This document shows positions 1,035-34,443 of a stretch of 34,986 bases of DNA, one piece after another (position 1 is the stretch's first letter; the number at the start of each line of letters is the position of its first letter). Below the pieces are notes generated by a model. That model was not told the origin of the DNA. It ran no database searches and worked only from the letters and a program-made list of their open reading frames with translations. The DNA is taken from contig NIVC01004792.1 of assembly GCA_002269645.1 (NCBI GenBank), forward strand, positions 1 to 34,986. Reading direction: 5' to 3'. The translations under genes and the position numbers were made by a program. Origin of the DNA: Macrostomum lignano (taxonomy: Eukaryota).

Positions 1035-1217
1035 CAGACAGACAGACTGATAGACAGACAGACAGACAGACAGGCAGACAGACAGACAGATAGCCCTAAG
1101 ACAGACAGACAGATAGCCCTAAGACAGACAGACAGATAGCCCTAAGACAGACAGACAGATAGCCCTAAGACAGACAGACAGATAGACAGACAGACAGACA
1201 GACAGACACAGACACTA

Positions 1218-1254
<37 letters not shown>

Positions 1255-1257
1255 CTA

Positions 1258-1295
<38 letters not shown>

Positions 1296-1329
1296 TCAGA
1301 CAAGCAGACAGACAGACAGACAGACAGAC

Positions 1330-1372
<43 letters not shown>

Positions 1373-1451
1373 GTCAGACAGACAGACAGACAGACAAGCA
1401 GACAGACAGACAAGCAGACAGACAGACAAGCAGACAGACAGACAGACAGTC

Positions 1452-1484
<33 letters not shown>

Positions 1485-1505
1485 CAGACAGACAGACAGA
1501 CAGAC

Positions 1506-1580
<75 letters not shown>

Positions 1581-1634
1581 GACAGACAGACAGACAGACA
1601 GACAAGCAGACAGACAAGCAGACAGACAGACAGT

Positions 1635-1666
<32 letters not shown>

Positions 1667-1683
1667 CAGACAGACAGACAAGC

Positions 1684-1720
<37 letters not shown>

Positions 1721-1745
1721 CAGACAGACAGACAGACAGACAGAC

Positions 1746-1792
<47 letters not shown>

Positions 1793-1807
1793 CAGACAGA
1801 CACAGAC

Positions 1808-1842
<35 letters not shown>

Positions 1843-1941
1843 GTCAGACAGACAGACAGACAGACAAGCAGACAGACAGACAGACAGACAGACAGACAGT
1901 CAGACAGACAGACAGACAGACAAGCAGACAGACAGACAAGC

Positions 1942-2016
<75 letters not shown>

Positions 2017-2121
2017 CAGACAGACAGACAGACAGACAGACAAGCAGACAGACAGACAGACAGACAGACAAGCAGACAGACAGACAGACAGACAGACAAG
2101 CAGACAGACAGACAGACAGTC

Positions 2122-2164
<43 letters not shown>

Positions 2165-2195
2165 CAGACAGACAGACAGACAGTCAGACAGACAG
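1035..2195. repeat. Interrupted (CAGA)n/(GACA)n microsatellite, about 1.16 kb
   Basis: Continuous cagacagaca tract with recurrent interruptions (CAAG, GTCA, CACA, GACACTAA, GATAGCCCTAA). It accounts for the VCLS-repeat ORFs in the track. Confidence 0.98.
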
Positions 2196-2815: not shown

Positions 2816-13279
<10,464 letters not shown>

Positions 13280-16304: not shown

Positions 16305-18036
16305 TCAAGCCTCCTCGTCATCATCGACTTCCTCGTCACCGCTCGCCATTTCCGCGTCGTCGTCACTGCTGCCGCCATCGTCGGGATCGTCGTCAAGCAG
16401 CTCGGGCACAAAGTAGGACAGGCCGTCGTCCAGCACGGTGGAGGTCAGGCGCACCCTGCCGGGGGCTTCGGCGGCGGCCTTGGCCGCAGTCTCGCTGAGA
16501 AGGTCGTCGGTAAGCCGGCCGCCGGCCGCCTTGTCCCAGCAGGCGACGGGCCGCACCCGGAACTCGGCCATCTGGTACTGGCACAGCTTCAGCACCTCGC
16601 ACTGCTCCGGGGTGAGGCGGCGACCCCGCCGGCAGACCAGATGCGGCCGCTCCAGGTGGATGACACCTTTGACCAGGCGCACAGGCAGGCCCAGCTTCCG
16701 CAGCGCGGGCTCCATCGAGTGCTGCCACTGCGGGCAGGCGCCGGGCATCAGTTCAACGCTGTTCACCGCGGCAAAGCCGGACCTGGCGAAGTCGGCGTCG
16801 GTGAGGCCGGCCAGGAGCTCCGACACTGCGGCCAGGCTCCGGTTGGTGAACAGCAGGGCCTTCTGGTTGCGCAGCAGGCGGCTCAGCCGGTGCAGATTCG
16901 GCTGCAGCTCGTCCCCGGGCGTCAGGCCCAGCGCCTTGGCGATGAGGCGGTTCTTGCCTAGCAACAGCTTGCTGTCCTTCAGCTCGGCTCGCAGCATCTG
17001 AGGGGCGAATTCGGGGTGCAAATTTTGAGACGGATATTCCAGCGCGGTGAAAACCCTACATAGGCACTAAGCAGGTGAAATAGGAAAGTGACTTTAAACG
17101 ACTTTAAAACGACGCCGATGAAACGACGCTCAAGAGAGTCACTCTGAAGCGTCTTATTGTCTGCGACTCGTTTGCGTACGACGCATTTGCGTCGCTTGAT
17201 GAATTCGAGTCGCATCACTAGCGAAAGTTGAGCGCCAACCACAGATACTAGAAGAATAACAAGATGTGCCAGTCAAGCATATACACTTAGTAAAACAGCT
17301 TTCTATTTTCAGTTCAGTAGCAAAGAAGAATACATAAGCTATTTTATAAAAAAACAAAGCCAGCTGAAATGACTTCGATAAGCTTAGAAGCCCAAGCTTG
17401 CAGGCGTAAACAGTTAATTGGCTCAGCAATAATGTACATTAGCCAGTCCACTGAAATGTACATAGCAGCTTTAGGCTGGAATTCCAAGAAAGGCAATAAA
17501 AATTGGGTCCGGGCTGGGGGTGTGGAAAGGCGCGGTTGGAGGGTTAAAGCCGGGGGTAAAAGCCAATAAATGAGCATTGCCTTTAAAAATAAATAAAAAT
17601 GCTTCAGTTGAACCTACTACTGAGCAAAAAGTAGCTTGCACGCAAATGTGCTGAGCGGCCCCTCTAGTTATTCTAGTATCTTTGGCGACAACACAACGAT
17701 TCTTGGACAAGTCTTTTGCGACTTTTTTACGATTCTACAACTCACGTGACGCGCTTGTGACGCAACAGTCGCCTCTCCGTCGCATTAGACGCGTTTGAGT
17801 AGTCTGAAAAAAGTCACAAGAGTCGCCCCAGGGTCGCTAGTGCAACAATAGCCAAGACACCCGATTCTCACCTGCAGCTTGGAGCTGCGCATGTTGTCAA
17901 TGCACAGCACCAGAATCCTATCGTAGGAGTTCACCAGATCCCTGACGCGCTCCATCAGCTGGGATTTGACATCCTGACTGCGCCGCTTCTTGGTCTTGGT
18001 GAGCGGCACTGGCCGGTCTCGCTTCGACTTGGGCAT
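16305..18036 (-). CDS. MRTO4: mRNA turnover protein 4 / ribosome assembly factor Mrt4 (P0-like); 2 exons (18036-17872, 16997-16305), about 285 aa
   Basis: MPKSKRDRPVPLTKTKK N-terminus, NMRSSKL, LGKNRLIAKALG, ALLFTN, DFARSG, HSMEPALRKLGLP, GRRLTPEQCEVLKL and an acidic tail. Junction CAG|GTGAGA ... cctcag|ATG is phase 0. Confidence 0.95.
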
Positions 18037-22529: not shown

Positions 22530-23103
22530 TAAGTCTGGAAGTCCTTGCACTTTCATTTGGCGAACACAACAGCTAGTATAATTTGCATTTTGCCGGGGAC
22601 TTCAAGTGTAGATTAGTCACTCATTGTCAGCCAATCATGTATGTCAGCGTTACCTAGCTAACTTTAATTGGCCCTGTTTTGGAGTGGGGTGGTGGGGCAG
22701 AGGATTGGCAGTGGGTGCAGCAGGGTTGGTATAGCTGTGGGTGGCTCTTTATACCCGAGTTTTTTGTTTGCAGGCTTGTACTTCGCTCTCTCGTTCATCT
22801 AATTTTTTTTGCCTTTGTCTCTATCTACACTGTACCGGAATAATTCTTTTTTAATCAGATCTAACGTTATTCCTAGATAAATTCATAATGCATGCAAGTT
22901 GATATCTTTATTATCTTTCCATACATGTATATATTCTTTAGAAATATTTCATTACAGCTGCTTATAAACGTTACAAAACGCTTCTTCTGTCTTCAAAATA
23001 CTTTTTGCATCAATTGATGTATTGGGGGGGAATAGCTAATGTAAAATTTACACACAGCAGGGAATGATGCTGAGAGGGACTGTATTCAAAGATACATGTA
23101 ACA

Positions 23104-23622
23104 ATGAGGGCTCTTTGCGTCTGCCTGTTGGTGTCTCTGGCCCTGTCCGTGAACTAAATTAACTCCGCCGTGACGCCTCGCAGTGCGGCAGACAACAGGC
23201 AAGAGGTTCGGATCTGATCTACAGCGTTGCAAATGGCGATTATTTGTTCGTCAGCAAGGACAAGAGGGGCAGCGCGCCGGACAATTTGGTCAAGAGAACA
23301 TCGTTGAGAACATCGGCGAGTCGAGCAAATCGGTTCCTCCTGCAGCACGGCGGCAATAACCGCTACGGCATCTACAACCCGAGCTCCGATGGCTCACGTG
23401 GTCCTGCCTCACCCAAGAGAAGCCATCAAGCAGAGGAACGAGTTCGTATTTGAGAGCGTCGGGCACAATCGCTCTGTGATATTCAACCCCAGCTATGGTA
23501 AATATCTGTTTGCGTCAAAAAGCCTTCACAACGTAGACAATAACCTTGTGCTCAGTCATAAATCTTGGTTCGATTGCCGCAACAGGTTCACTCTGATTCT
23601 GCACGACGAGCCTTGTTCCTAG
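23104..23622 (+). pseudogene. Decayed secreted protein gene: signal peptide plus three-repeat beta-trefoil-like domain
   Basis: ATG 23104 reads MRALCVCLLVSLALSVN then TAA (23155-57), followed by two frameshifts. The repeats are IYSVANGDYLFVSK..DNLV, IYNPS (truncated) and IFNPSYGKYLFASK..DNNLV; TAG at 23620-22. The fold is inferred from repeat spacing. Confidence 0.65.
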
Positions 23623-24881
23623 TCTGTATAAATGAGAGAACTTCATTAAGTGCACCTGAGCTCTCGCACCTGATCAGAGACCGAACGATGCATCTGATAA
23701 CTTTCAGATTGGGTTAAATCCAGGACTAATTAATGACTTAATTGATTTAACAATTTTTTGATACCTACATGTAAGCAAGTTAAGATGACTACTTTGATGC
23801 AGTGTAATGTAGATTGATCTGATACGTTGTCTACGGTATAGAGCTTCTCGATGAATTTAGGCTCAATTAGTTCGCTTTTATACCGAGTTGTTGCAAACAG
23901 AACGAAGATTTGCATGGATTACACGTCTGTATTGGCTCCTGCTGCTTTTCCAGAATATACATGTAGGGAACAGCTTTTTGTCTATGGGGAGTCTGGAGAG
24001 CAGCAGAAATGCTTGAGTTCGATGTCTGATTCAAATAGAACCAAATGTTGGTCTTAACCTACCTGTTTCTGATTCAGGAAAAAAGAACACAGCTACTATA
24101 TACGTTATAATTAGGCAGTTTCCGTTTTTTATTCACAAAAATCAACAAAATCTTACCTTTAGAACTCTTGTGGATCGCAACTGGCTTTACTATGACCAGG
24201 TGGCAATGCTGACAAATGTTTAATTTGTTTCCTGAAACTTCGTTTGGCTTGTACAAGCTGGCCCTTGGCGGGTTTGGCCCATAGATTTTTGGGCACTGGA
24301 AGCAATATATAGATATGTCTATGCTTCCTAGGCCGAAACGCGGCACAAATACCTTATGGTAACATATGTAATTTGTCAATGCAACAACAGCATCAGCAAC
24401 AACAATAACAACAACAACATCACAATATACTGTCAGGTCTTATAAAATACGCGTCTCTGGACTGGGTCGTCTAGATCTTTAGTCTTGTAGTCCTCCGTAA
24501 ATACAGAAGACAACGACAGGCAACACGAGCCGTTTGGGCGGACAGATAAGAGGGCTCTGGGTGTGCAGGACGGGCGGTGTGCAGAAGAAGAATTGCATTC
24601 AATTAAAGATTAATTGAAATCTTGAACCTAGAATTTACATGCGCATCTACGAGATACATTAATTTCGTAGTTTTTGTTTACTACTACTTTCTAGTCATGC
24701 AGTAGGCGGGATCGCTTAAAACGGTAAAATGAATGCTGGTTAAATACCACAATACAATTAAACTGCTCAGTCAGCCAGCACGCGGAGGCGAAATAATATA
24801 GACACTACTTAGTCATCGTATGATTATTCACGGTTATCAACCCATCCCATCCAAAAACCTGATTTGATCTGTCTATCTATC

Positions 24882-25052
24882 CTAGCTTCAGCAAAAAAAT
24901 TATGCTATTTACGTTTCTTGCTTTGAGAACTATTGTTCTTTTTAGTAAATATACCATCGAATCCTTCTAGCTTCAGCGATAAAAATATTTTATGCAATTT
25001 ACGTTTCTTGCTGTGAGAACTATTGTTCTTTTTAGTAAATATACCATCGAAT
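24882..25052. repeat. Tandem duplication of an about 81-86-bp unit
   Basis: Two copies of ctagcttcagc...tttacgtttcttgc..gagaactattgttcttttta gtaaatataccatcgaat starting at 24882 and 24967. Confidence 0.92.
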
Positions 25053-25293
25053 TGTACAATTTTGCAGACTATTAGCAGAGCCTTTCAAACGGATGCTTGA
25101 AAAAAAATAGTCGACGATATAGAATCAGAATCAACGATACACTATTTGTGGGATAATGTACAAATTAAATCCAGAATGAATTTCTTCGATAAAACTTGGT
25201 CTTTGCCTAAAACTAGCAAAAATAAAGTTGCAAGCCACTGAACGCGCAAAGGAGTTGCTAGAATTGTAGCAGTCGATTACGAAGCTATTAGTA

Positions 25294-25299
25294 TTTATT
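25294..25299 (-). terminator. Polyadenylation signal AATAAA of the Cys-rich peptide gene
   Basis: Lies about 105 nt downstream of the stop codon on the coding strand. Confidence 0.5.
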
Positions 25300-25402
25300 T
25301 TGGTACCAAATTAATTGACAATTAAAACCATAAAACTGAAATGGATGATGCATCGTTCAGCCTCTGATCAGGTGAGAGCCGCCCGGGTCAGTCAGCGAGC
25401 GC

Positions 25403-25612
25403 TCAGGTGCAGCGGTACATGCGGGGATTGTAGCAGTGCGTGCCGCACTTGCGATGACCGACCGGGCACAGGAAGTAGCCATTGATGCAAGTGTGCGTCC
25501 TCGGGCTGTAGCAGGTGCCGCCGCAGGACCGGTCGCCGCCACCGCAGGCGTCAGTAGAGTTCACAGACACGGCCAGCAGAACCAGCAGGCAGACGCAGAG
25601 AGCCTTCATCAT
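25403..25612 (-). CDS. Secreted 69-aa cysteine-rich peptide resembling carbohydrate-binding module family 52 (Carb_bind)
   Basis: Hydrophobic signal peptide, then CGGTCYSPRTHTC-INGYFLCP-VGHRK-CGTHCYNPRMYRC. It has 8 mature Cys, GC-rich codons, an upstream TATA box and a downstream AATAAA. Confidence 0.8.
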   Translation of the reverse strand: MMKALCVCLLVLLAVSVNSTDACGGGDRSCGGTCYSPRTHTCINGYFLCPVGHRKCGTHCYNPRMYRCT

Positions 25613-27928: not shown

Positions 27929-30900
27929 ATGATGCTGTGTTGTTTGAGCTGTAGAGATGATGCTGTGAGCTGTAGAGATGATGCTGTGTTGTTTGAGCAG
28001 TAGAGATGATGCTGTGTTGTTTGAGCTGTAGAGATGATGCTGTGAGCTGTAGAGATGATGCTGTGTTGTTTGAGCAGTAGAGATGATGCTGTGTTGTTTG
28101 AGCAGTAGAGATGATGCTGTGAGCTGTAGAGATGATGCTGTGAGCTGTAGAGATGATGCTGTGAGCTGTAGAGATGATGCTGTGTTGTTTGAGCAGTAGA
28201 GATGATGCTGTTTGAGGTGTAGAGATGATGCTGTGTTGTTTGAGCTGTAGAGATGATGCTGTTTAAGCTGTAGAGATGATGTTGTGTGAGCTGTAGAGAT
28301 GATGCTGTGAGCTGTAGAGATGATGCTGTGTTGTTTGAGCAGTAGAGATGATGCTGTTTGAGGTGTAGAGATGATGCTGTGTTGTTTGAGCTGTAGAGAT
28401 GATGCTGTTTAAGCTGTAGAGATGATGTTGTGTGAGCTGTAGAGATGATGCTGTGAGCTGTAGAGATGATGCTGTGTTGTTTGAGCAGTAGAGATGATGC
28501 TGTGTTGTTTGAGCAGTAGAGATGATGCTGTTTGAGCTGTAGAGATGATGCTGTGAGCTGTAGAGATGATGCTGTGAGCTGTAGAGATGATGCTGTGTTG
28601 TTTGAGCAGTAGAGATGGTGCTGTGTTGTTTGAGCAGTAGAGATGATGCTGTTTGAGCTGTAGAGATGATGCTGTGTTGTTTGAGCTGTAGAGATGATGC
28701 TGTTTGAGCTGTAGAGATGATGTTGTGTGAGCTGTAGAGATGATGCTGTGTTGTTTGAGCAGTAGAGATGGTGCTGTGTTGTTTGAGCAGTAGAGATGAT
28801 GCTGTTTGAGCTGTAGAGATGATGCTGTTTGAGCTGTAGAGATGATGCTGTGTTGTTTGAGCAGTAGAGATGATGCTGTGTTGTTTGAGCAGTAGAGATG
28901 ATGCTGTTTGAGCTGTAGAGATGATGCTGTGAGCTGTAGAGATGATGCTGTGAGCTGTAAAGATGATGCTGTGTTGTTTGAGCTGTAGAGATGATGCTGT
29001 TTGAGCTGTAGAGATGATGCTGTGTTGTTTGAGCTGTAGAGATGATGCTGTGTTGTTTGAGCTGTAGAGATGATGCTGTTTGAGCTGTAGAGATGATGTT
29101 GTAAGCTGTAGAGATGATGCTGTGTTGTTTGAGCAGTAGAGATGATGCTGTGTGAGCTGTAGAGATGATGCTGTGAGCTGTAGAGATGATGCTGTGAGCT
29201 ATAGAGATGATGCTGTGAGCTGTAGAGATGATGCTGTTTAAGCTGTAGAGATGACGCTGTGAGCTGTATAGATGATGCAGTGAGAGCAGTAGAGATGATG
29301 CTGTGTTGTTTGAGCTGTAGAGATGATGCTGTTTGAGCTGTAGAGATGATGTTGTGAGCTGTAGAGATGATGCTGTGTTGTTTGAGTAGTAGAGATGATG
29401 CTGTTTGAGCTGTAGAGATGATGCTGTGAGCTATAGAGATTATGCTGTGTTGTTTGAGCTGTAGAGATGATGCTGTTTGAGCTGTAGAGATGATGTTGTG
29501 AGCTGTAGAGATGATGCTGTGTTGTTTGAGCAGTAGAGATGATGCTGTGTGAGCTGTAGAGATGACGCTGTGAGCTGTAGAGATGATGCTGTGAGCAGTA
29601 GAGATGATGCTGTGAGCTGTAGAGATGATGCTGTTTAAGCTGTAGAGATGACGCTGTGAGCTGTATAGATGATGCAGTGAGAGCAGTAGAGATGATGCTG
29701 TGTTGTTTGAGCTGTAGAGATGATGCTGTTTGAGCTGTAGAGATGATGTTGTGAGCTGTAGAGATGATGCTGTGTTGTTTGAGCAGTAGAGATGATGCTG
29801 TGTGAGCTGTAGAGATGATGCTGTGAGCTGTAGAGATGACGCTGTGAGCTGTAGAAATGATGCTGTGAGCTGTAGAGATGATGCTGTGAGCTGTAGAGAT
29901 GATGCTGTTTAAGCTGTAGAGATGACGCTGTGAGCTGTAGAGATGACGCTGTGAGCTGTAGAGATGATGCTGTGAGCTGTAGAGATGACGCTGTGTTGTT
30001 TGAGCTGTAGAGATGATGCTGTTTGAGCTGTAGAGATAATGTTGTGAGCTGTAGAGATGATGCTGTGTTGTTTGAGCAGTAGAGATGATGCTGTGTGAGC
30101 TGTAGAGATGATGCTGTGAGCTGTAGAGATGACGCTGTGAGCTGTAGAAATGATGCTGTGAGCTGTAGAGATGATGCTGTGAGCTGTAGAGATGATGCTG
30201 TTTAAGCTGTAGAGATGACGCTGTGAGCTGTAGAGATGACGCTGTGAGCTGTATAGATGATGCTGTGTTGTTTGAGCTGTAGAGATGATGCTGTGTTGTT
30301 TGAGCTGTAGAGATGATGCTGTTTGAGCTGTAGAGATGATGTTGTAAGCTGTAGAGATGATGCTGTGTTGTTTGAGCAGTAGAGATGATGCTGTGTGAGC
30401 TGTAGAGATGATGCTGTGAGCTGTAGAGATGATGCTGTGAGCTATAGAGATGATGCTGTGAGCTGTAGAGATGATGCTGTTTAAGCTGTAGAGATGACGC
30501 TGTGAGCTGTATAGATGATGCAGTGAGAGCAGTAGAGATGATGCTGTGTTGTTTGAGCTGTAGAGATGATGCTGTTTGAGCTGTAGAGATGATGTTGTGA
30601 GCTGTAGAGATGATGCTGTGTTGTTTGAGTAGTAGAGATGATGCTGTTTGAGCTGTAGAGATGATGCTGTGAGCTATAGAGATGATGCTGTGTTGTTTGA
30701 GCTGTAGAGATGATGCTGTTTGAGCTGTAGAGATGATGTTGTGAGCTGTAGAGATGATGCTGTGTTGTTTGAGCAGTAGAGATGATGCTGTGTGAGCTGT
30801 AGAGATGACGCTGTGAGCTGTAGAGATGATGCTGTGAGCTGTAGAGATGATGCTGTGAGCTGTAGAGATGATGCTGTTTAAGCTGTAGAGATGACGCTGT

Positions 30901-32892
30901 GAGCTGTATAGATGATGCAGTGAGAGCAGTAGAGATGATGCTGTGTTGTTTGAGCTGTAGAGATGATGCTGTTTGAGCTGTAGAGATGATGTTGTGAGCT
31001 GTAGAGATGATGCTGTGTTGTTTGAGCAGTAGAGATGATGCTGTGTGAGCTGTAGAGATGATGCTGTGAGCTGTAGAGATGACGCTGTGAGCTGTAGAAA
31101 TGATGCTGTGAGCTGTAGAGATGATGCTGTGAGCTGTAGAGATGATGCTGTTTAAGCTGTAGAGATGACGCTGTGAGCTGTAGAGATGACGCTGTGAGCT
31201 GTAGAGATGATGCTGTGAGCTGTAGAGATGACGCTGTGTTGTTTGAGCTGTAGAGATGATGCTGTTTGAGCTGTAGAGATAATGTTGTGAGCTGTAGAGA
31301 TGATGCTGTGTTGTTTGAGCAGTAGAGATGATGCTGTGTGAGCTGTAGAGATGATGCTGTGAGCTGTAGAGATGACGCTGTGAGCTGTAGAAATGATGCT
31401 GTGAGCTGTAGAGATGATGCTGTGAGCTGTAGAGATGATGCTGTTTAAGCTGTAGAGATGACGCTGTGAGCTGTAGAGATGACGCTGTGAGCTGTATAGA
31501 TGATGCTGTGTTGTTTGAGCTGTAGAGATGCTGTTTGAGCTGTAGAGATGATATTGTGAGCTGTAGAGATGATGCTGTGTTGTTTGAGCAGTAGAGATGA
31601 TGCTGTTTGAGCTGTAAAGATGATGCTGTGAGCTATAGAGATGATGCTGTGTTGTTTGAGCTGTAGAGATGATGCTCTTTGAGCTGTAGAGATGATGTTG
31701 TGAGCTGTAGAGATGATGCTGTGTTGTTTAAGCAGTAGAGATGATGCTGTGTGAGCTGTAGAGATGATGCTGTGAGCTGTAGAGATGATGCTGTGTTGTT
31801 TGAGCAGTAGAGATGATGCTGTGTTGTTTGAGCAGTAGAGATGATGCTGTTTGAGCTGTAGAGATGATGCTGTTTGAGCTGTAGAGACGATGCTGTGTTG
31901 TTTGAGCTGTAGAGATAATGCTGTTTGAGCTGTAGAAATGATGTTGTGTGAGCTGTAGAGATGATGCTGTGAGCTGTAGAGATGATGCTGCGTTGTTTGA
32001 GCTGTAGAGATGATGCTGTGTGAGCTGTAGAGATGATGTTGTGAGCTGTAGAGATGATGCTGTGAGCTGTAGAGATGATGCTGTGAGCTGTAAAGATGAT
32101 GCTGTGTTGTTTGAGCTGTAGAGATGATGCTGTTTGAGCTGTAGAGATGATGCTGTGTTGTTTGAGCTGTAGAGATGATGCTGTTTGAGCTGTAGAGATG
32201 ATGTTGTGTGAGCTGTAGAGATGATGCTGTGAGCTGTAGAGATGATGCTGTGTTGTTTGAGCAGTAGAGATGATGCTGTTTGAGCTGTAGAGATGATGCT
32301 GTTTGAGCTGTAGAGATGATGCTGTGTTGTTTGAGCAGTAGAGATGATGCTGTGTTGTTTGAGCAGTAGAGATGATGCTGTGTGAGCTGTAGAGATGATG
32401 CTGTGAGCTGTAGAGATGATGCTGTGAGCTGTAAAGATGATGCTGTGTTGTTTGAGCAGTAGAGATGATGCTGTTTGAGCTGTAGAGATGATGTTGTGAG
32501 CTGTAGAGATGATGCTGTGCTGTTTGAGCAGTAGAGATGATGCTGTGTGAGCTGTAGAGATGATGCTGTGAGCTGTAGAGATGACGCTGTGAGCTGTATA
32601 GATGATGCAGTGAGAGCTGTAGAGATAATGATGTGAGCTGTAGAGATGATGCTGTGAGCTGTAGAGATGATGCTGTGAGCTGTAGAGATGATGCTGTGTT
32701 GTTTGAGCAGTAGAGATGAGGCTGTGAGAGCTGTAGAGATGATGCTGTGAGCTGTAGAGATGATGCTGTGAGAGCTGTAGAGATGATGCTGCGTGAGCTG
32801 TAGAGATGATGCTGTGTGAGCTGTAGATGATGCTGTGAGCTGTAGAGATGATGCTGTGAGCTGTAGAGATGATGCTGTTAGAGCTGTAGAGA
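27929..32892. repeat. About 5-kb compound minisatellite (core AGCTGTAGAGATGATGCTGT; 21, 22, 23 and 28-bp variants) with higher-order duplications
   Basis: Continuous array; rare variants recur at a fixed 1243-bp offset. Confidence 0.98.
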
Positions 32893-33510: not shown

Positions 33511-34443
33511 TTAGCCCAGAGGCCTGTCAGACCCGGCATCCTGGACGACGCGGGCTCCGTCGCGATGCTCGCCGCCAAGCCGCTGGTCCCCGTCCTCCTC
33601 CGCGTCTCCGGCCTTCCCGCCAGCTCCGCGCCGCGCGCGACAAAAGCCGAACAGCCGGCGCTGCAGCCGGACGTGCAGGTTGGGGTTGGCCAGGATGTAG
33701 ATGAAGAAGTTCATAGCCGAGTCCAGGATAGTCATGATGTTCGCCAGCTTCATCAGGCAGGCGCTGGCCGGAGCGCTGGGATCCAGGATGACGAAGGCGG
33801 CGTCCAGCTTGGACAGGAAGGTGGGGAACTCGAACAGGAAGAACACAATGGACAGCGCCACCACCGTGCGGTTGGCCGGCGAGATGGAGAAGCGGCGACG
33901 ACGCTGGCGACGAAGGCCAGACGCGATGCTCTCGGAGTCGGCTGACACGGAGGCTGCGCCGGAGGCGGCGGCAGCGGCGGCGGCGGCGGCGGAGACCTGC
34001 AGCTGGCGCTGGCGCCTCCTGTCGGCGCGGATGACGGCCCAGGAGATGACGGCGGAGGAGGCGGAGACGATGATGATGGGGCCGCCGGACTGCAGCAGGA
34101 ACAGCAGCACGGTCAGGTAGGCCACCGAGTAGGCGGGGCTGAGCAGCAGCGGCGAGGGCAGCTGGTCCGCGAACTGGCCCGAGTCCAGGCAGAACACGTA
34201 GACGAACTCGAAGGCCCGCGGCAGCCCCAGGAAGAAGGCGAGGCCGGTGGCCAGGGGGAACACCGGGCAGTTGAGCCGGCGGCTCCAGGTGTGGTACAGG
34301 CGGTGCGGCGATGCCACGGCGGCCAGGCGCAGCAGGGCGATGAAACACCACCGTCCAGTTGCGGAGGCACTGCGACCAGGCGACCAGCGGCACGCTGAGG
34401 CTCATCAGCACGGCCAGGAAGCGCGCCAAGCGGATGAGGGCAC
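33511..34443 (-). CDS. Class A (rhodopsin-like) GPCR, likely peptide-receptor type; last exon covering TM3-TM7, apparent 1-bp insertion at 34343-34345
   Basis: Acceptor gccgcag at 34444. Reads QCLRNWTVVF / IALLRLAAVASP (TM3), FFLGLPRAFE (TM4), TM5, NRTVVALSIVFFLFEFP (TM6) and LDSAMNFFIY (TM7). Confidence 0.85.

What the first reader, a model, noticed from the sequence alone, without database searches (positions are those of the whole stretch)
23104..25612. Payload-swapped secretion cassette: two convergent genes share signal peptide and stop/3'UTR but have unrelated mature domains
Seen: the signal peptide at 23104 (+), MRALCVCLLVSLALSVN, is 42/51 nt identical to that of the peptide gene at 25609 (-), MKALCVCLLVLLAVSVN. 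Similarity fades at the likely cleavage site. Seen: downstream of the trefoil-like ORF, 23651-23694 reads TGCACCTGAGC..ACCTGATCAGAG..GAACGATGCATC. The same three blocks occur in the same order at 25411-25347 (-), where TGC ACC TGA is the peptide's last two codons and stop. The middles are unrelated (Cys-rich CBM-like versus beta-trefoil-like). Established: toxin and antimicrobial precursor families such as conotoxins keep signal and UTR sequences while the mature region diverges, usually by mutation. Inference: a duplicated gene shell had its mature domain replaced wholesale by another putative carbohydrate-binding fold, suggesting a domain-swapping route for secreted defence or adhesion effectors.
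Basis: partly seen in the sequence, partly recalled or inferred. Interest (0 to 1): 0.82.

Follow-up and report, generated by a model that had tools for sequence, protein, structure and literature searches.

The report
Chimeric pseudogene beside a secreted-peptide gene

Summary
The window is Macrostomum lignano contig NIVC01004792.1. The two convergent loci share a 63-nt 5' arm (ATG and signal; 42/51 nt in the signal) and a 3' block (TGC-ACC-TGA plus UTR; 17 nt at 94% and 32 nt at 91%). Each block occurs exactly twice per locus.

The minus-strand gene (25612-25403) is an intact 69-aa signal peptide plus CBM52/PF10645 peptide. The plus-strand middle (23166-23607) is 76% identical in DNA to an intact three-repeat beta-trefoil gene from a metagenome contig. 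That gene has its own, different signal and 3' UTR. hhalign finds no homology between the two payloads.

The plus-strand locus is not a gene:
- a TAA follows the signal directly;
- there is a net +5 nt shift near 23200;
- a 35-nt deletion removes the core of trefoil repeat 2 and shifts the frame again.

These lesions are shared by all three assembly copies, and each copy has added its own indels. TGC-ACC-TGA encodes the last Cys of the CBM52 domain, so the trefoil fragment entered a CBM52-gene copy, not the reverse. The searches that were possible found no further loci with this shell.

Verdict: a chimeric pseudogene. The mosaic is confirmed. The "cassette system" is not supported.

The parts
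25403..25612 (-). Intact gene for a 69-aa secreted peptide precursor: a hydrophobic signal (MMKALCVCLLVLLAVSVNS) plus an 8-Cys CBM52-type (Pfam PF10645 Carb_bind) domain. It ends ...RCT, with stop TGA at 25405-25403.
   Evidence: ORF. PF10645 scores 36.3 bits against a cut-off of 25, covering residues 29-69. The protein is identical on contig NIVC01001342.1, and the gene is called there with PF10645. The DNA is identical in all 3 copies except for one G lost in L003.
25347..25411 (-). 3' block of the peptide gene: the last two codons, the stop, and the proximal 3' UTR that is shared with the chimera. AATAAA lies at 25299-25294 (read from the sequence).
   Evidence: and the sequence.
23104..23157 (+). 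Shell 5' part of the chimera: ATG plus 17 signal codons (MRALCVCLLVSLALSVN), followed directly by the stop TAA (23155-23157).
   Evidence: 42/51 nt identical to the peptide gene's signal. The stop is seen and is present in all three contigs.
23166..23607 (+). Fragment derived from a beta-trefoil gene, running from the linker (AVTPRSAA...) to the last strand (RNRFTLIL). It is 76% identical in DNA to the intact gene on L004 and carries multiple lesions.
   Evidence: DNA alignment 317/419 and tblastn E = 1.4e-24. HMMER gives 23 relatives, the best P0003 at E = 9e-28. Family alignment. Fold of the intact relative: pLDDT 95.1, and Foldseek beta-trefoil matches with TM 0.75-0.9.
23195..23215 (+). 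Lesion 1: a net +5 nt relative to the intact relative (about +6 at 23202-23207, -1 after 23213). This moves the trefoil reading from frame 1 to frame 3.
   Evidence: The sequence is identical in L001 and L003.
23388..23394 (+). Lesion 2: the site of a 35-nt deletion. It removes the codons for GLWLFVSNDREEP, the core strands of trefoil repeat 2, and moves the reading from frame 3 to frame 1.
   Evidence: Shared by all three contigs.
23295..23326 (+). Probable -1/+1 indel pair that puts about 30 nt of repeat 1 out of register. This is inferred from the alignment and is less certain.
   Evidence: DNA alignment.
23423..23424 (+). Window-specific in-frame 12-nt deletion. L001 and L003 keep CGGGGCTGAGCG, which matches the intact relative.
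23608..23650 (+). End of the trefoil reading (stop TAG at 23620-23622 in the window copy) plus about 28 nt of unassigned sequence before the shell's 3' block. L001 and L003 carry +1 nt near 23584 and +1 nt at 23634, which let their frame run on to TGC ACC TGA.
23651..23694 (+). Shell 3' part: TGCACCTGA (non-coding in the window copy) plus the shared UTR block. Weaker similarity runs to about 23770. The peptide gene's AATAAA has no counterpart here.

Best explanation
The plus-strand locus (23104 to about 23770) is a chimeric pseudogene.

Shown:
- It is a diverged inverted copy of the neighbouring CBM52-type secreted-peptide gene. It keeps that gene's ATG and signal and its last codons, stop and proximal 3' UTR.
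- Most of the mature-peptide coding sequence (about 140 nt, everything between the first few codons after the signal and the last two codons) has been replaced by about 450-490 nt copied from an unrelated beta-trefoil (lectin-type) gene, running from its linker to just past its stop.
- The locus cannot make a secreted trefoil. A TAA follows the signal, there are two uncompensated frame shifts, and a 35-nt deletion removes the core of repeat 2. These lesions predate the split of the three assembly copies, and each copy has since gained further indels.

Inferred:
- The replacement was a DNA-level event (ectopic recombination, gene conversion or template switching). Its 5' junction lies in a patch of about 25 nt (23166-23194) where the two parent genes happen to resemble each other.
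- The first trefoil-derived codons are in frame with the ATG, so the fusion may once have encoded a secreted trefoil before it decayed.

The functional unit in the region is the minus-strand peptide gene. By family membership, it probably encodes a secreted glucan- or carbohydrate-binding peptide.
For: - Mosaic structure: 5' arm of 63 nt at 78% and 3' pieces at 94% and 91%. The middle is 317/419 nt identical to the intact trefoil gene on L004. The payloads are unrelated, with hhalign probability 0.15%.
- Direction: TGC-ACC-TGA lies inside the PF10645 match of the peptide (residues 29-69). In the window's chimera it is out of frame and follows the trefoil's own TAG. The intact relative has a different signal (MLLSQVACTIALSAALLAFSG), a linker of about 55 aa, and no 3' block.
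- Non-functionality: the ORF from the ATG is 17 codons in all three contigs. Even removing a hypothetical 35-nt GT..AG segment gives only 97-104 aa ending out of frame. Lesions are mapped against the intact relative. The family alignment shows that the YLFVSND..GD core of repeat 2 is missing.
- Real, not an artefact: the same lesions occur on NIVC01004792.1, NIVC01001342.1 and NIVC01005137.1, and the assembly is known to contain >=95%-identical duplicated blocks (PMC5730564).
- Continuing decay: the window has a 12-nt deletion, and L001/L003 have +1 nt at 23584. Copy-to-copy change in the chimera is 5-10 events/kb against 4-7/kb in the intergenic DNA, while the peptide gene has 0 substitutions.
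- Junction: 23171-23194 resembles the peptide gene (score 22 vs 12.4 +/- 2.2, 0/1000 shuffles) and also the trefoil gene (19/23 ungapped, read from the alignment).
- No gene is called at the chimera in any of the three loci.
Against: - No transcript data could be consulted, so transcription or unusual processing of the chimera is not excluded.
- The intact trefoil comparator comes from an unidentified metagenome contig, not from the M. lignano assembly. Some lesion positions, especially the -1/+1 pair and the exact 5' junction, therefore depend on an alignment at 76% identity.
- The 5' fusion is in frame, and the signal shows 4 synonymous against 3 non-synonymous codon changes. This is compatible with a period of function.
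- In L001 and L003 the last part of the locus is an open 94-aa ATG-ORF that ends at the shared TGC-ACC-TGA.
- The copy-divergence numbers are small counts.
Confidence: 0.8

Rival explanations
1. One reading: the plus-strand locus is a functional secreted protein, made of the signal peptide plus a beta-trefoil lectin domain and created by payload swapping. It would be expressed from the shared shell, perhaps with a mini-intron that removes the TAA.
For: A GT(23149)...AG(23183) segment of 35 nt would join the signal to the frame-3 reading, and L003 has GTAAAC there, which is a better donor. The first trefoil-derived codons are in frame with the ATG.
Against: The putative intron covers sequence homologous to coding sequence of the intact trefoil gene (AVTPRS = AVTPGS). 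The average M. lignano intron is 1.1-1.4 kb. No GT-AG pair of suitable length repairs the second shift; this was judged by reading the sequence, not by a computed enumeration. The 35-nt deletion removes essential strands of repeat 2. The best-case product is 97-104 aa with an out-of-frame tail. The copies differ by frame-shifting indels. No gene is called there.
Confidence: 0.06
2. A genome-wide cassette system: many loci reuse this signal and 3' UTR shell around different payloads, in the way some toxin or antimicrobial-peptide superfamilies do.
For: One shell carries two unrelated payloads at adjacent loci.
Against: Only 2 proteins among 5.8 billion share words with the precursor, and both are copies of the same gene. 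Each block occurs exactly twice in each of the three fetched loci. Neither block has an exact match in 241 million metagenome records. The whole M. lignano genome and transcriptome could not be searched at the DNA level with these tools, so this is only a partial test.
Confidence: 0.04
3. Reverse direction: the signal and 3' block belonged originally to the trefoil gene, and the CBM52 peptide gene is the derived chimera.
For: Sequence similarity alone is symmetric. The trefoil locus is the more decayed of the two and so could be older.
Against: TGC-ACC-TGA encodes the last conserved Cys of the PF10645 domain. In the window's trefoil locus it lies after the trefoil's own stop and out of frame. 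The intact trefoil relative has a different signal, a long linker that the chimera lacks, its own stop and an unrelated 3' UTR.
Confidence: 0.04
4. Assembly or sequencing artefact: a chimeric contig, or PacBio indel errors, created the apparent mosaic and frameshifts.
For: Mlig_3_7 is a long-read assembly of a repetitive, partly polyploid genome. Some of the copy-specific differences are single-base indels in short homopolymer runs, for example the missing G in L003's peptide gene.
Against: The mosaic, the TAA, the +5 shift and the 35-nt deletion are identical on three contigs that otherwise differ by substitutions and indels. A 35-nt deletion and a stop codon are not typical read errors.
Confidence: 0.02
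5. The trefoil fragment arrived by a mobile element or by retroposition, as a piggyBac-type insertion or a processed cDNA.
For: TTAA lies at both edges of the insert (23159-23162 and 23646-23649, read). The insert contains the end of the coding sequence plus a short stretch past the stop, as a cDNA fragment would.
Against: There are no terminal inverted repeats at the insert ends (read; none reported). There is no poly(A) tract and no spliced-leader remnant. The insert starts inside the linker, not at a transcript 5' end.
Confidence: 0.04

Closest known systems
Chimeric (fusion) pseudogenes and chimeric genes formed by ectopic recombination, gene conversion or template switching between non-homologous genes
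   Same: The sequence is a mosaic with two identifiable parents. The junction lies in a short patch of fortuitous similarity. The recipient's regulatory and targeting ends are retained. The locus later decayed through stops and frameshifts.
   Different: The structure is a three-part sandwich (recipient 5' end, donor middle, recipient 3' end) lying directly beside its intact parent in inverted orientation. The donor parent has not been located in the same genome.
Conotoxin and amphibian or invertebrate antimicrobial-peptide precursor superfamilies: conserved signal and UTR with a hypervariable mature region (from general knowledge, not tested here)
   Same: The signal and the 3' end are conserved between paralogues while the mature region differs.
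   Different: In those families the mature regions are homologous and diverge by accelerated substitution across many functional paralogues. Here the middles are non-homologous folds, only one pair exists, and one member is dead.
Secreted signal-peptide plus CBM52 (PF10645) glucan-binding proteins of fungi, e.g. Magnaporthe oryzae GBP MGG_05232 (bioRxiv 10.1101/2025.07.03.663104)
   Same: The minus-strand peptide has the same architecture, a secretion signal plus a single PF10645 domain.
   Different: It comes from a flatworm and is only 69 aa. Its ligand and biological role are untested.
Beta-trefoil lectin-type domains (RicinB_lectin_2 PF14200, Bombyx 30K lipoprotein C-terminal domain, MytiLec/Mitsuba, fungal lectins such as BEL and SSA)
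   Same: The intact relatives of the payload have the three-repeat beta-trefoil fold. Some reach PF14200 and are fused to aerolysin/ETX-MTX2, PI-PLC-X or other effector domains, as lectin targeting modules are.
   Different: The family motif is YLFVSND..GDNVVEAH..RNxF rather than (QxW)3. The closest relative, P0003, and the window copy match no Pfam model. The window copy lacks the core of repeat 2.

Membership tests
CBM52 / Pfam PF10645 Carb_bind (minus-strand peptide) | Score above Pfam's gathering cut-off over most of the model | tested here: met
   36.3 bits against a cut-off of 25; residues 29-69 match profile positions 1-45 of 49. The precomputed PF10645 annotation appears on the called gene.
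CBM52 / Pfam PF10645 Carb_bind (minus-strand peptide) | Binding of beta-1,3-glucan | not testable with these tools
   This needs a binding assay with recombinant or synthetic peptide.
Secreted precursor (both loci) | N-terminal signal peptide with a predicted cleavage site | not tested
   No signal-peptide predictor was available. The hydrophobic stretch ALCVCLLVLLAV after M-(M)-K/R is read from the sequence only.
Beta-trefoil fold (payload family) | Three tandem repeats of about 45 aa that fold as a 12-strand trefoil | tested here: met
   Met for the intact relative P0003: AF2 pLDDT 95.1, pTM 0.90; Foldseek against the PDB gives probability 1.00 and TM 0.75-0.9 to Symfoil, ThreeFoil, Mitsuba and 30K lipoprotein; the family profile hits PDB trefoil sequences at E = 7.7e-4.
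Beta-trefoil fold (window copy itself) | All three repeats intact in one reading frame | tested here: not met
   The core of repeat 2 is deleted (35 nt), there are two frame shifts, and a stop follows the signal.
Ricin-B / R-type lectin (PF14200 RicinB_lectin_2; (QxW)3) | Pfam score above the cut-off, and QxW motifs | tested here: not met
   The window payload and P0003 match no Pfam family. Only some distant relatives pass (P0018 27.9 > 25.6; P0012 24.1 < 25.6). The repeats end in RNxF, not QxW.
Conotoxin-like hypervariable precursor superfamily | Homologous mature regions that diverge by substitution, and many paralogues sharing the signal | tested here: not met
   The payloads are non-homologous (hhalign probability 0.15%). 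No further protein shares the signal words. Each block occurs only twice per locus.
Processed pseudogene / retrocopy | Poly(A) tract, target-site duplication, and a start at the transcript 5' end (spliced leader) | tested here: not met
   There is no poly(A) tract after the 3' block and no leader-like sequence before the ATG (sequence). Homology to the peptide gene starts at the ATG.
Unitary or duplicated pseudogene | Recognisable coding homology with disabling lesions that are shared by independent copies, plus further lesions accumulating | tested here: met
piggyBac-type insertion | TTAA target duplication plus terminal inverted repeats | tested here: not met
   TTAA is present at both edges (23159-62 and 23646-49), but the insert ends have no inverted repeats (none).

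The most novel reading that the evidence does not exclude
The chimera was created as an in-frame graft of a complete beta-trefoil lectin-type domain onto the secretion and expression shell of a CBM52-peptide gene. It then worked for a time as a secreted lectin, or still works in other M. lignano lines or other Macrostomum species. That would be a natural case of one carbohydrate-binding fold being swapped wholesale for another inside a fixed signal/UTR frame. The three DV1 copies would be its recent wreck in a redundant neopolyploid genome.
Probability: 0.15. Interest if true: 0.5.

Novelty: new member of a known kind. Interest (0 to 1): 0.25.

Why it matters
The locus is a clean, datable example of how a secretion "shell" (start codon, signal, stop, UTR) can be recombined with a foreign domain at the DNA level. 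The 5' junction is in frame and sits in a short patch where the two parents look alike. As it stands, it is a dead relic in a genome full of redundant copies, so it says little about effector evolution in general.

Three practical points follow:
- This locus should not be annotated as a lectin gene.
- The neighbouring 69-aa CBM52-type peptide is the real gene. It is an unusual find for an animal and could be tested for glucan binding.
- The payload's relatives define a widespread beta-trefoil subfamily (YLFVSND..GDNVVEAH..RNxF), whose closest members match no Pfam model and which is often fused to pore-forming or hydrolase domains.

Tried and rejected
- A 35-nt mini-intron (23149-23183) to remove the TAA. 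Rejected: it would delete sequence homologous to coding sequence of the intact trefoil gene, and it still leaves a truncated product.
- A second small intron to repair the shift at about 23390. Reading the sequence, I found no GT-AG pair of workable length and phase. This was not enumerated by script.
- A leftover 'C-I-N-G' piece of the CBM52 coding sequence at 23625-23650. Rejected: alignment score 10-12 against a shuffle mean of 12.4-12.5.
- Word-index protein search with the payload: no hit. The exhaustive HMMER search was needed to find relatives.
- Search for an intact M. lignano trefoil parent with the family profile. None of the 44 hits is named M. lignano, and two of the three unnamed NCBI-sourced hits (P0046, P0055) come from other assemblies; the third, P0032, was not traced.
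- Exact DNA scans of JGI metagenome contigs for the 3' block and for the signal block: 0 hits each.
- Literature search for Mlig018268 and for Macrostomum trefoil lectins: nothing found.
- Direct PDB sequence searches with either payload alone: only chance-level hits.
- The bacterial-type promoter and terminator scan is uninformative for this eukaryote and showed no enrichment.
- TTAA at both insert edges as a piggyBac signature. Rejected for lack of terminal inverted repeats.
Full report
**Source and context**

An exact look-up of the 69-aa peptide places the window on NCBI assembly GCA_002269645.1. It is the whole 34,986-bp contig NIVC01004792.1. The only named relative is 'BOX15_Mlig018268g3 [Macrostomum lignano]'. 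[quoted passage not shown]

The rest of the window fits a flatworm nuclear contig:
- a multi-exon POLQ-like gene (POLQ_helical, Helicase_C);
- an MRTO4/L10P-like gene;
- a sub-threshold 7tm_1 fragment;
- many tandem arrays.

**Checking the observation**

- The signal stretches are 42/51 nt identical.
- Ungapped inverted homology runs 63 nt, from the ATG to 23166 (78%).
- The 3' similarity consists of TGCACCTGAGC(T/G)CTCGC (17 nt, 94%) and CTCGCACCTGATCAGAG..GAACGATGCATC (32 nt, 91%), separated by a 21-nt indel. Its local score is 53 against 17.4 +/- 2.5 for shuffles.
- Each block occurs exactly twice in the window and is not expected by chance. No other substantial inverted homology joins the two loci.

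**The two payloads**

The minus-strand ORF (25612-25403) is an intact 69-aa precursor. Its 8-Cys mature part passes Pfam's cut-off for PF10645 Carb_bind, which is CBM52 (36.3 vs 25 bits). Signal peptide plus a single CBM52 is the architecture of a secreted fungal glucan-binding protein (bioRxiv 10.1101/2025.07.03.663104).

The plus-strand middle matches no Pfam model and gave no word-index hit. An exhaustive HMMER search found 23 relatives. They share three repeats of Y-N-P-x-Y-x-x-Y-L-F-V-S-N-D...G-D-N-V-V-E-A-H...R-N-x-F. Some reach RicinB_lectin_2, and some are fused to aerolysin/ETX-MTX2, PI-PLC-X, EEP or LysM-C39 modules.

Several results identify the fold as a beta-trefoil:
- The family profile hits beta-trefoil sequences in the PDB (Symfoil, Mitsuba-1, Bombyx 30K lipoproteins).
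- The closest relative models at pLDDT 95.1 and pTM 0.90.
- That model matches beta-trefoils at TM 0.75-0.9.

hhalign finds no relation between the trefoil family and the CBM52 peptide (probability 0.15%).

**The plus-strand locus is not a gene**

Its ORF from the ATG is 17 codons and then TAA. The closest relative, P0003, lies on a 1-kb metagenome contig (L004). The full ORF there has its own signal (MLLSQVACTIALSAALLAFSG), a linker of about 55 aa and three intact repeats. It ends ...RNRFTLVLP*, and its 3' UTR lacks the shared block.

DNA homology between the window and L004 runs from 23166 to 23607 (317/419 identical). Relative to L004, the window has:
- a net +5 nt at about 23195-23215 (frame 1 to frame 3);
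- a probable -1/+1 pair at 23295/23326;
- a 35-nt deletion at 23388-23394, which removes GLWLFVSNDREEP, the core of repeat 2, and shifts frame 3 to frame 1;
- a 12-nt in-frame deletion after 23423.

The sequence that a hypothetical 35-nt GT..AG mini-intron would remove is homologous to coding sequence in L004. Even with that removal, the product is only 97-104 aa with an out-of-frame tail.

**Three copies**

The whole convergent pair is present on two more contigs: NIVC01001342.1 (L001) and NIVC01005137.1 (L003). All three copies share the TAA, the +5 shift and the 35-nt deletion, so these lesions are real and older than the split between the copies.

The copies have since diverged:
- The window lost 12 nt that L001, L003 and L004 retain.
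- L001 and L003 gained 1 nt near 23584, where the window still matches L004. They also carry one more G at 23634, so their terminal ORF happens to run on to the shared TGC-ACC-TGA.

Between copies the chimera changes at 5-10 events/kb. That is at least as fast as the intergenic DNA (4-7/kb). The peptide gene shows no substitutions and only one G lost from a GG run in L003. That lost G explains the 84-aa read-through protein annotated as BOX15_Mlig018268g3. These are small counts, but they are consistent with neutral decay of the chimera.

**Direction and mechanism**

TGC-ACC-TGA encodes the final Cys-Thr-stop of the CBM52 domain. In the window's chimera it is out of frame and lies 28 nt past the trefoil's own TAG. 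Together with the different signal and UTR of the intact trefoil gene, this shows that a trefoil-gene fragment was placed into a copy of the CBM52 gene, not the reverse.

At the 5' junction, 23171-23194 resembles the peptide gene (score 22 vs 12.4 +/- 2.2) and also the trefoil gene (19/23 ungapped). This suggests recombination or template switching in a patch of fortuitous similarity. That step is an inference.

The first trefoil-derived codons (AVTPRSAA) are in frame with the ATG. The signal shows 4 synonymous against 3 non-synonymous codon changes. A once-functional fusion therefore cannot be excluded. There is no poly(A) tract, no spliced-leader remnant and no terminal inverted repeat, so retroposition or transposon capture is not supported. 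The TTAA at both insert edges is probably chance.

**Is it a cassette system?**

No evidence supports one.
- Only two proteins among 5.8 billion share words with the precursor, and both are copies of this gene.
- Each block occurs exactly twice in every fetched locus.
- Neither block has an exact match in the metagenome collection.
- No M. lignano trefoil paralogue surfaced.

The tools could not search the complete M. lignano genome or transcriptome at the DNA level, so this remains the main untested point.

**Verdict**

The hybrid is a chimeric pseudogene lying next to its intact CBM52-peptide parent, in a genome known for redundancy. It is a new example of a known kind of event. Interest is modest unless an intact, expressed version turns up elsewhere.

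Noticed in passing
L003 10001-10255 (window equivalent about 25459-25460): The third copy of the peptide gene lacks one G in a GG run (CGGTCGGTC becomes CGGTC-GTC). This gives the annotated 84-aa read-through protein BOX15_Mlig018268g3, which ends inside the shared 3' block. It could be a long-read assembly error or a real pseudogenised homeologue.
   Followed up: partly
window 23159-23162 and 23646-23649: TTAA sits at both edges of the trefoil-derived insert. No terminal inverted repeats were found, so this is probably chance, but it is the piggyBac target motif.
   Followed up: partly
window about 23958-23960: There is a sharp change in similarity between the window and L001: 94.9% (many indels) to the left against 99.8% to the right. 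L003 stays at about 98.6-98.7% on both sides. This suggests a recombination or gene-conversion boundary between the copies.
   Followed up: no
window 23059-23074 (L001 and L003 upstream of the chimera's ATG): The 16-nt unit AGGGAATGATGCTGAG is tandemly duplicated in L001 and L003 but single in the window. A 15-nt TTTCAGATTGGGAAT duplication follows the 3' block in L001 and L003.
   Followed up: no
window 3541-13000 (-): A large multi-exon POLQ-like gene (helicase plus polymerase; POLQ_helical, Helicase_C, HTH_61). Its introns are filled with tandem repeats of 14-, 21-, 25-, 26- and 30-nt units.
   Followed up: partly
window 27941-32892: A tandem array of about 5 kb (21-23-nt unit TGTTTGAGCTGTAGAGATGATGC, about 210 copies, GC skew about 0.6). 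It is also present in L001. Its long minus-strand ORFs are artefacts of the repeat.
   Followed up: no
window 1035-2195: A (CAGA)n microsatellite of about 296 units. Similar TGTCT-rich repeats flank the trefoil gene on the metagenome contig L004 (830-1018), which hints that L004 comes from a macrostomid-like genome.
   Followed up: no
window 16305-17021 (-) and 33511-34317 (-): An exon of an MRTO4/ribosomal L10P-like gene (RL10P_insert 60 bits) and a sub-threshold rhodopsin-type GPCR fragment (7tm_1, 22.9 bits against a cut-off of 30.5).
   Followed up: partly
window 24882-25052: A 90-nt unit is duplicated in tandem (91% identical) in the spacer between the two convergent loci.
   Followed up: no
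proteins P0003-P0063 (family of the payload): The payload's relatives form a widespread beta-trefoil subfamily found in actinobacteria, marine eukaryote transcriptomes and metagenomes, with the repeat motif YLFVSND..GDNVVEAH..RNxF. Many members, including the closest relative P0003, match no Pfam model. Some are fused to aerolysin/ETX-MTX2, PI-PLC-X, EEP or LysM+C39 domains.
   Followed up: partly
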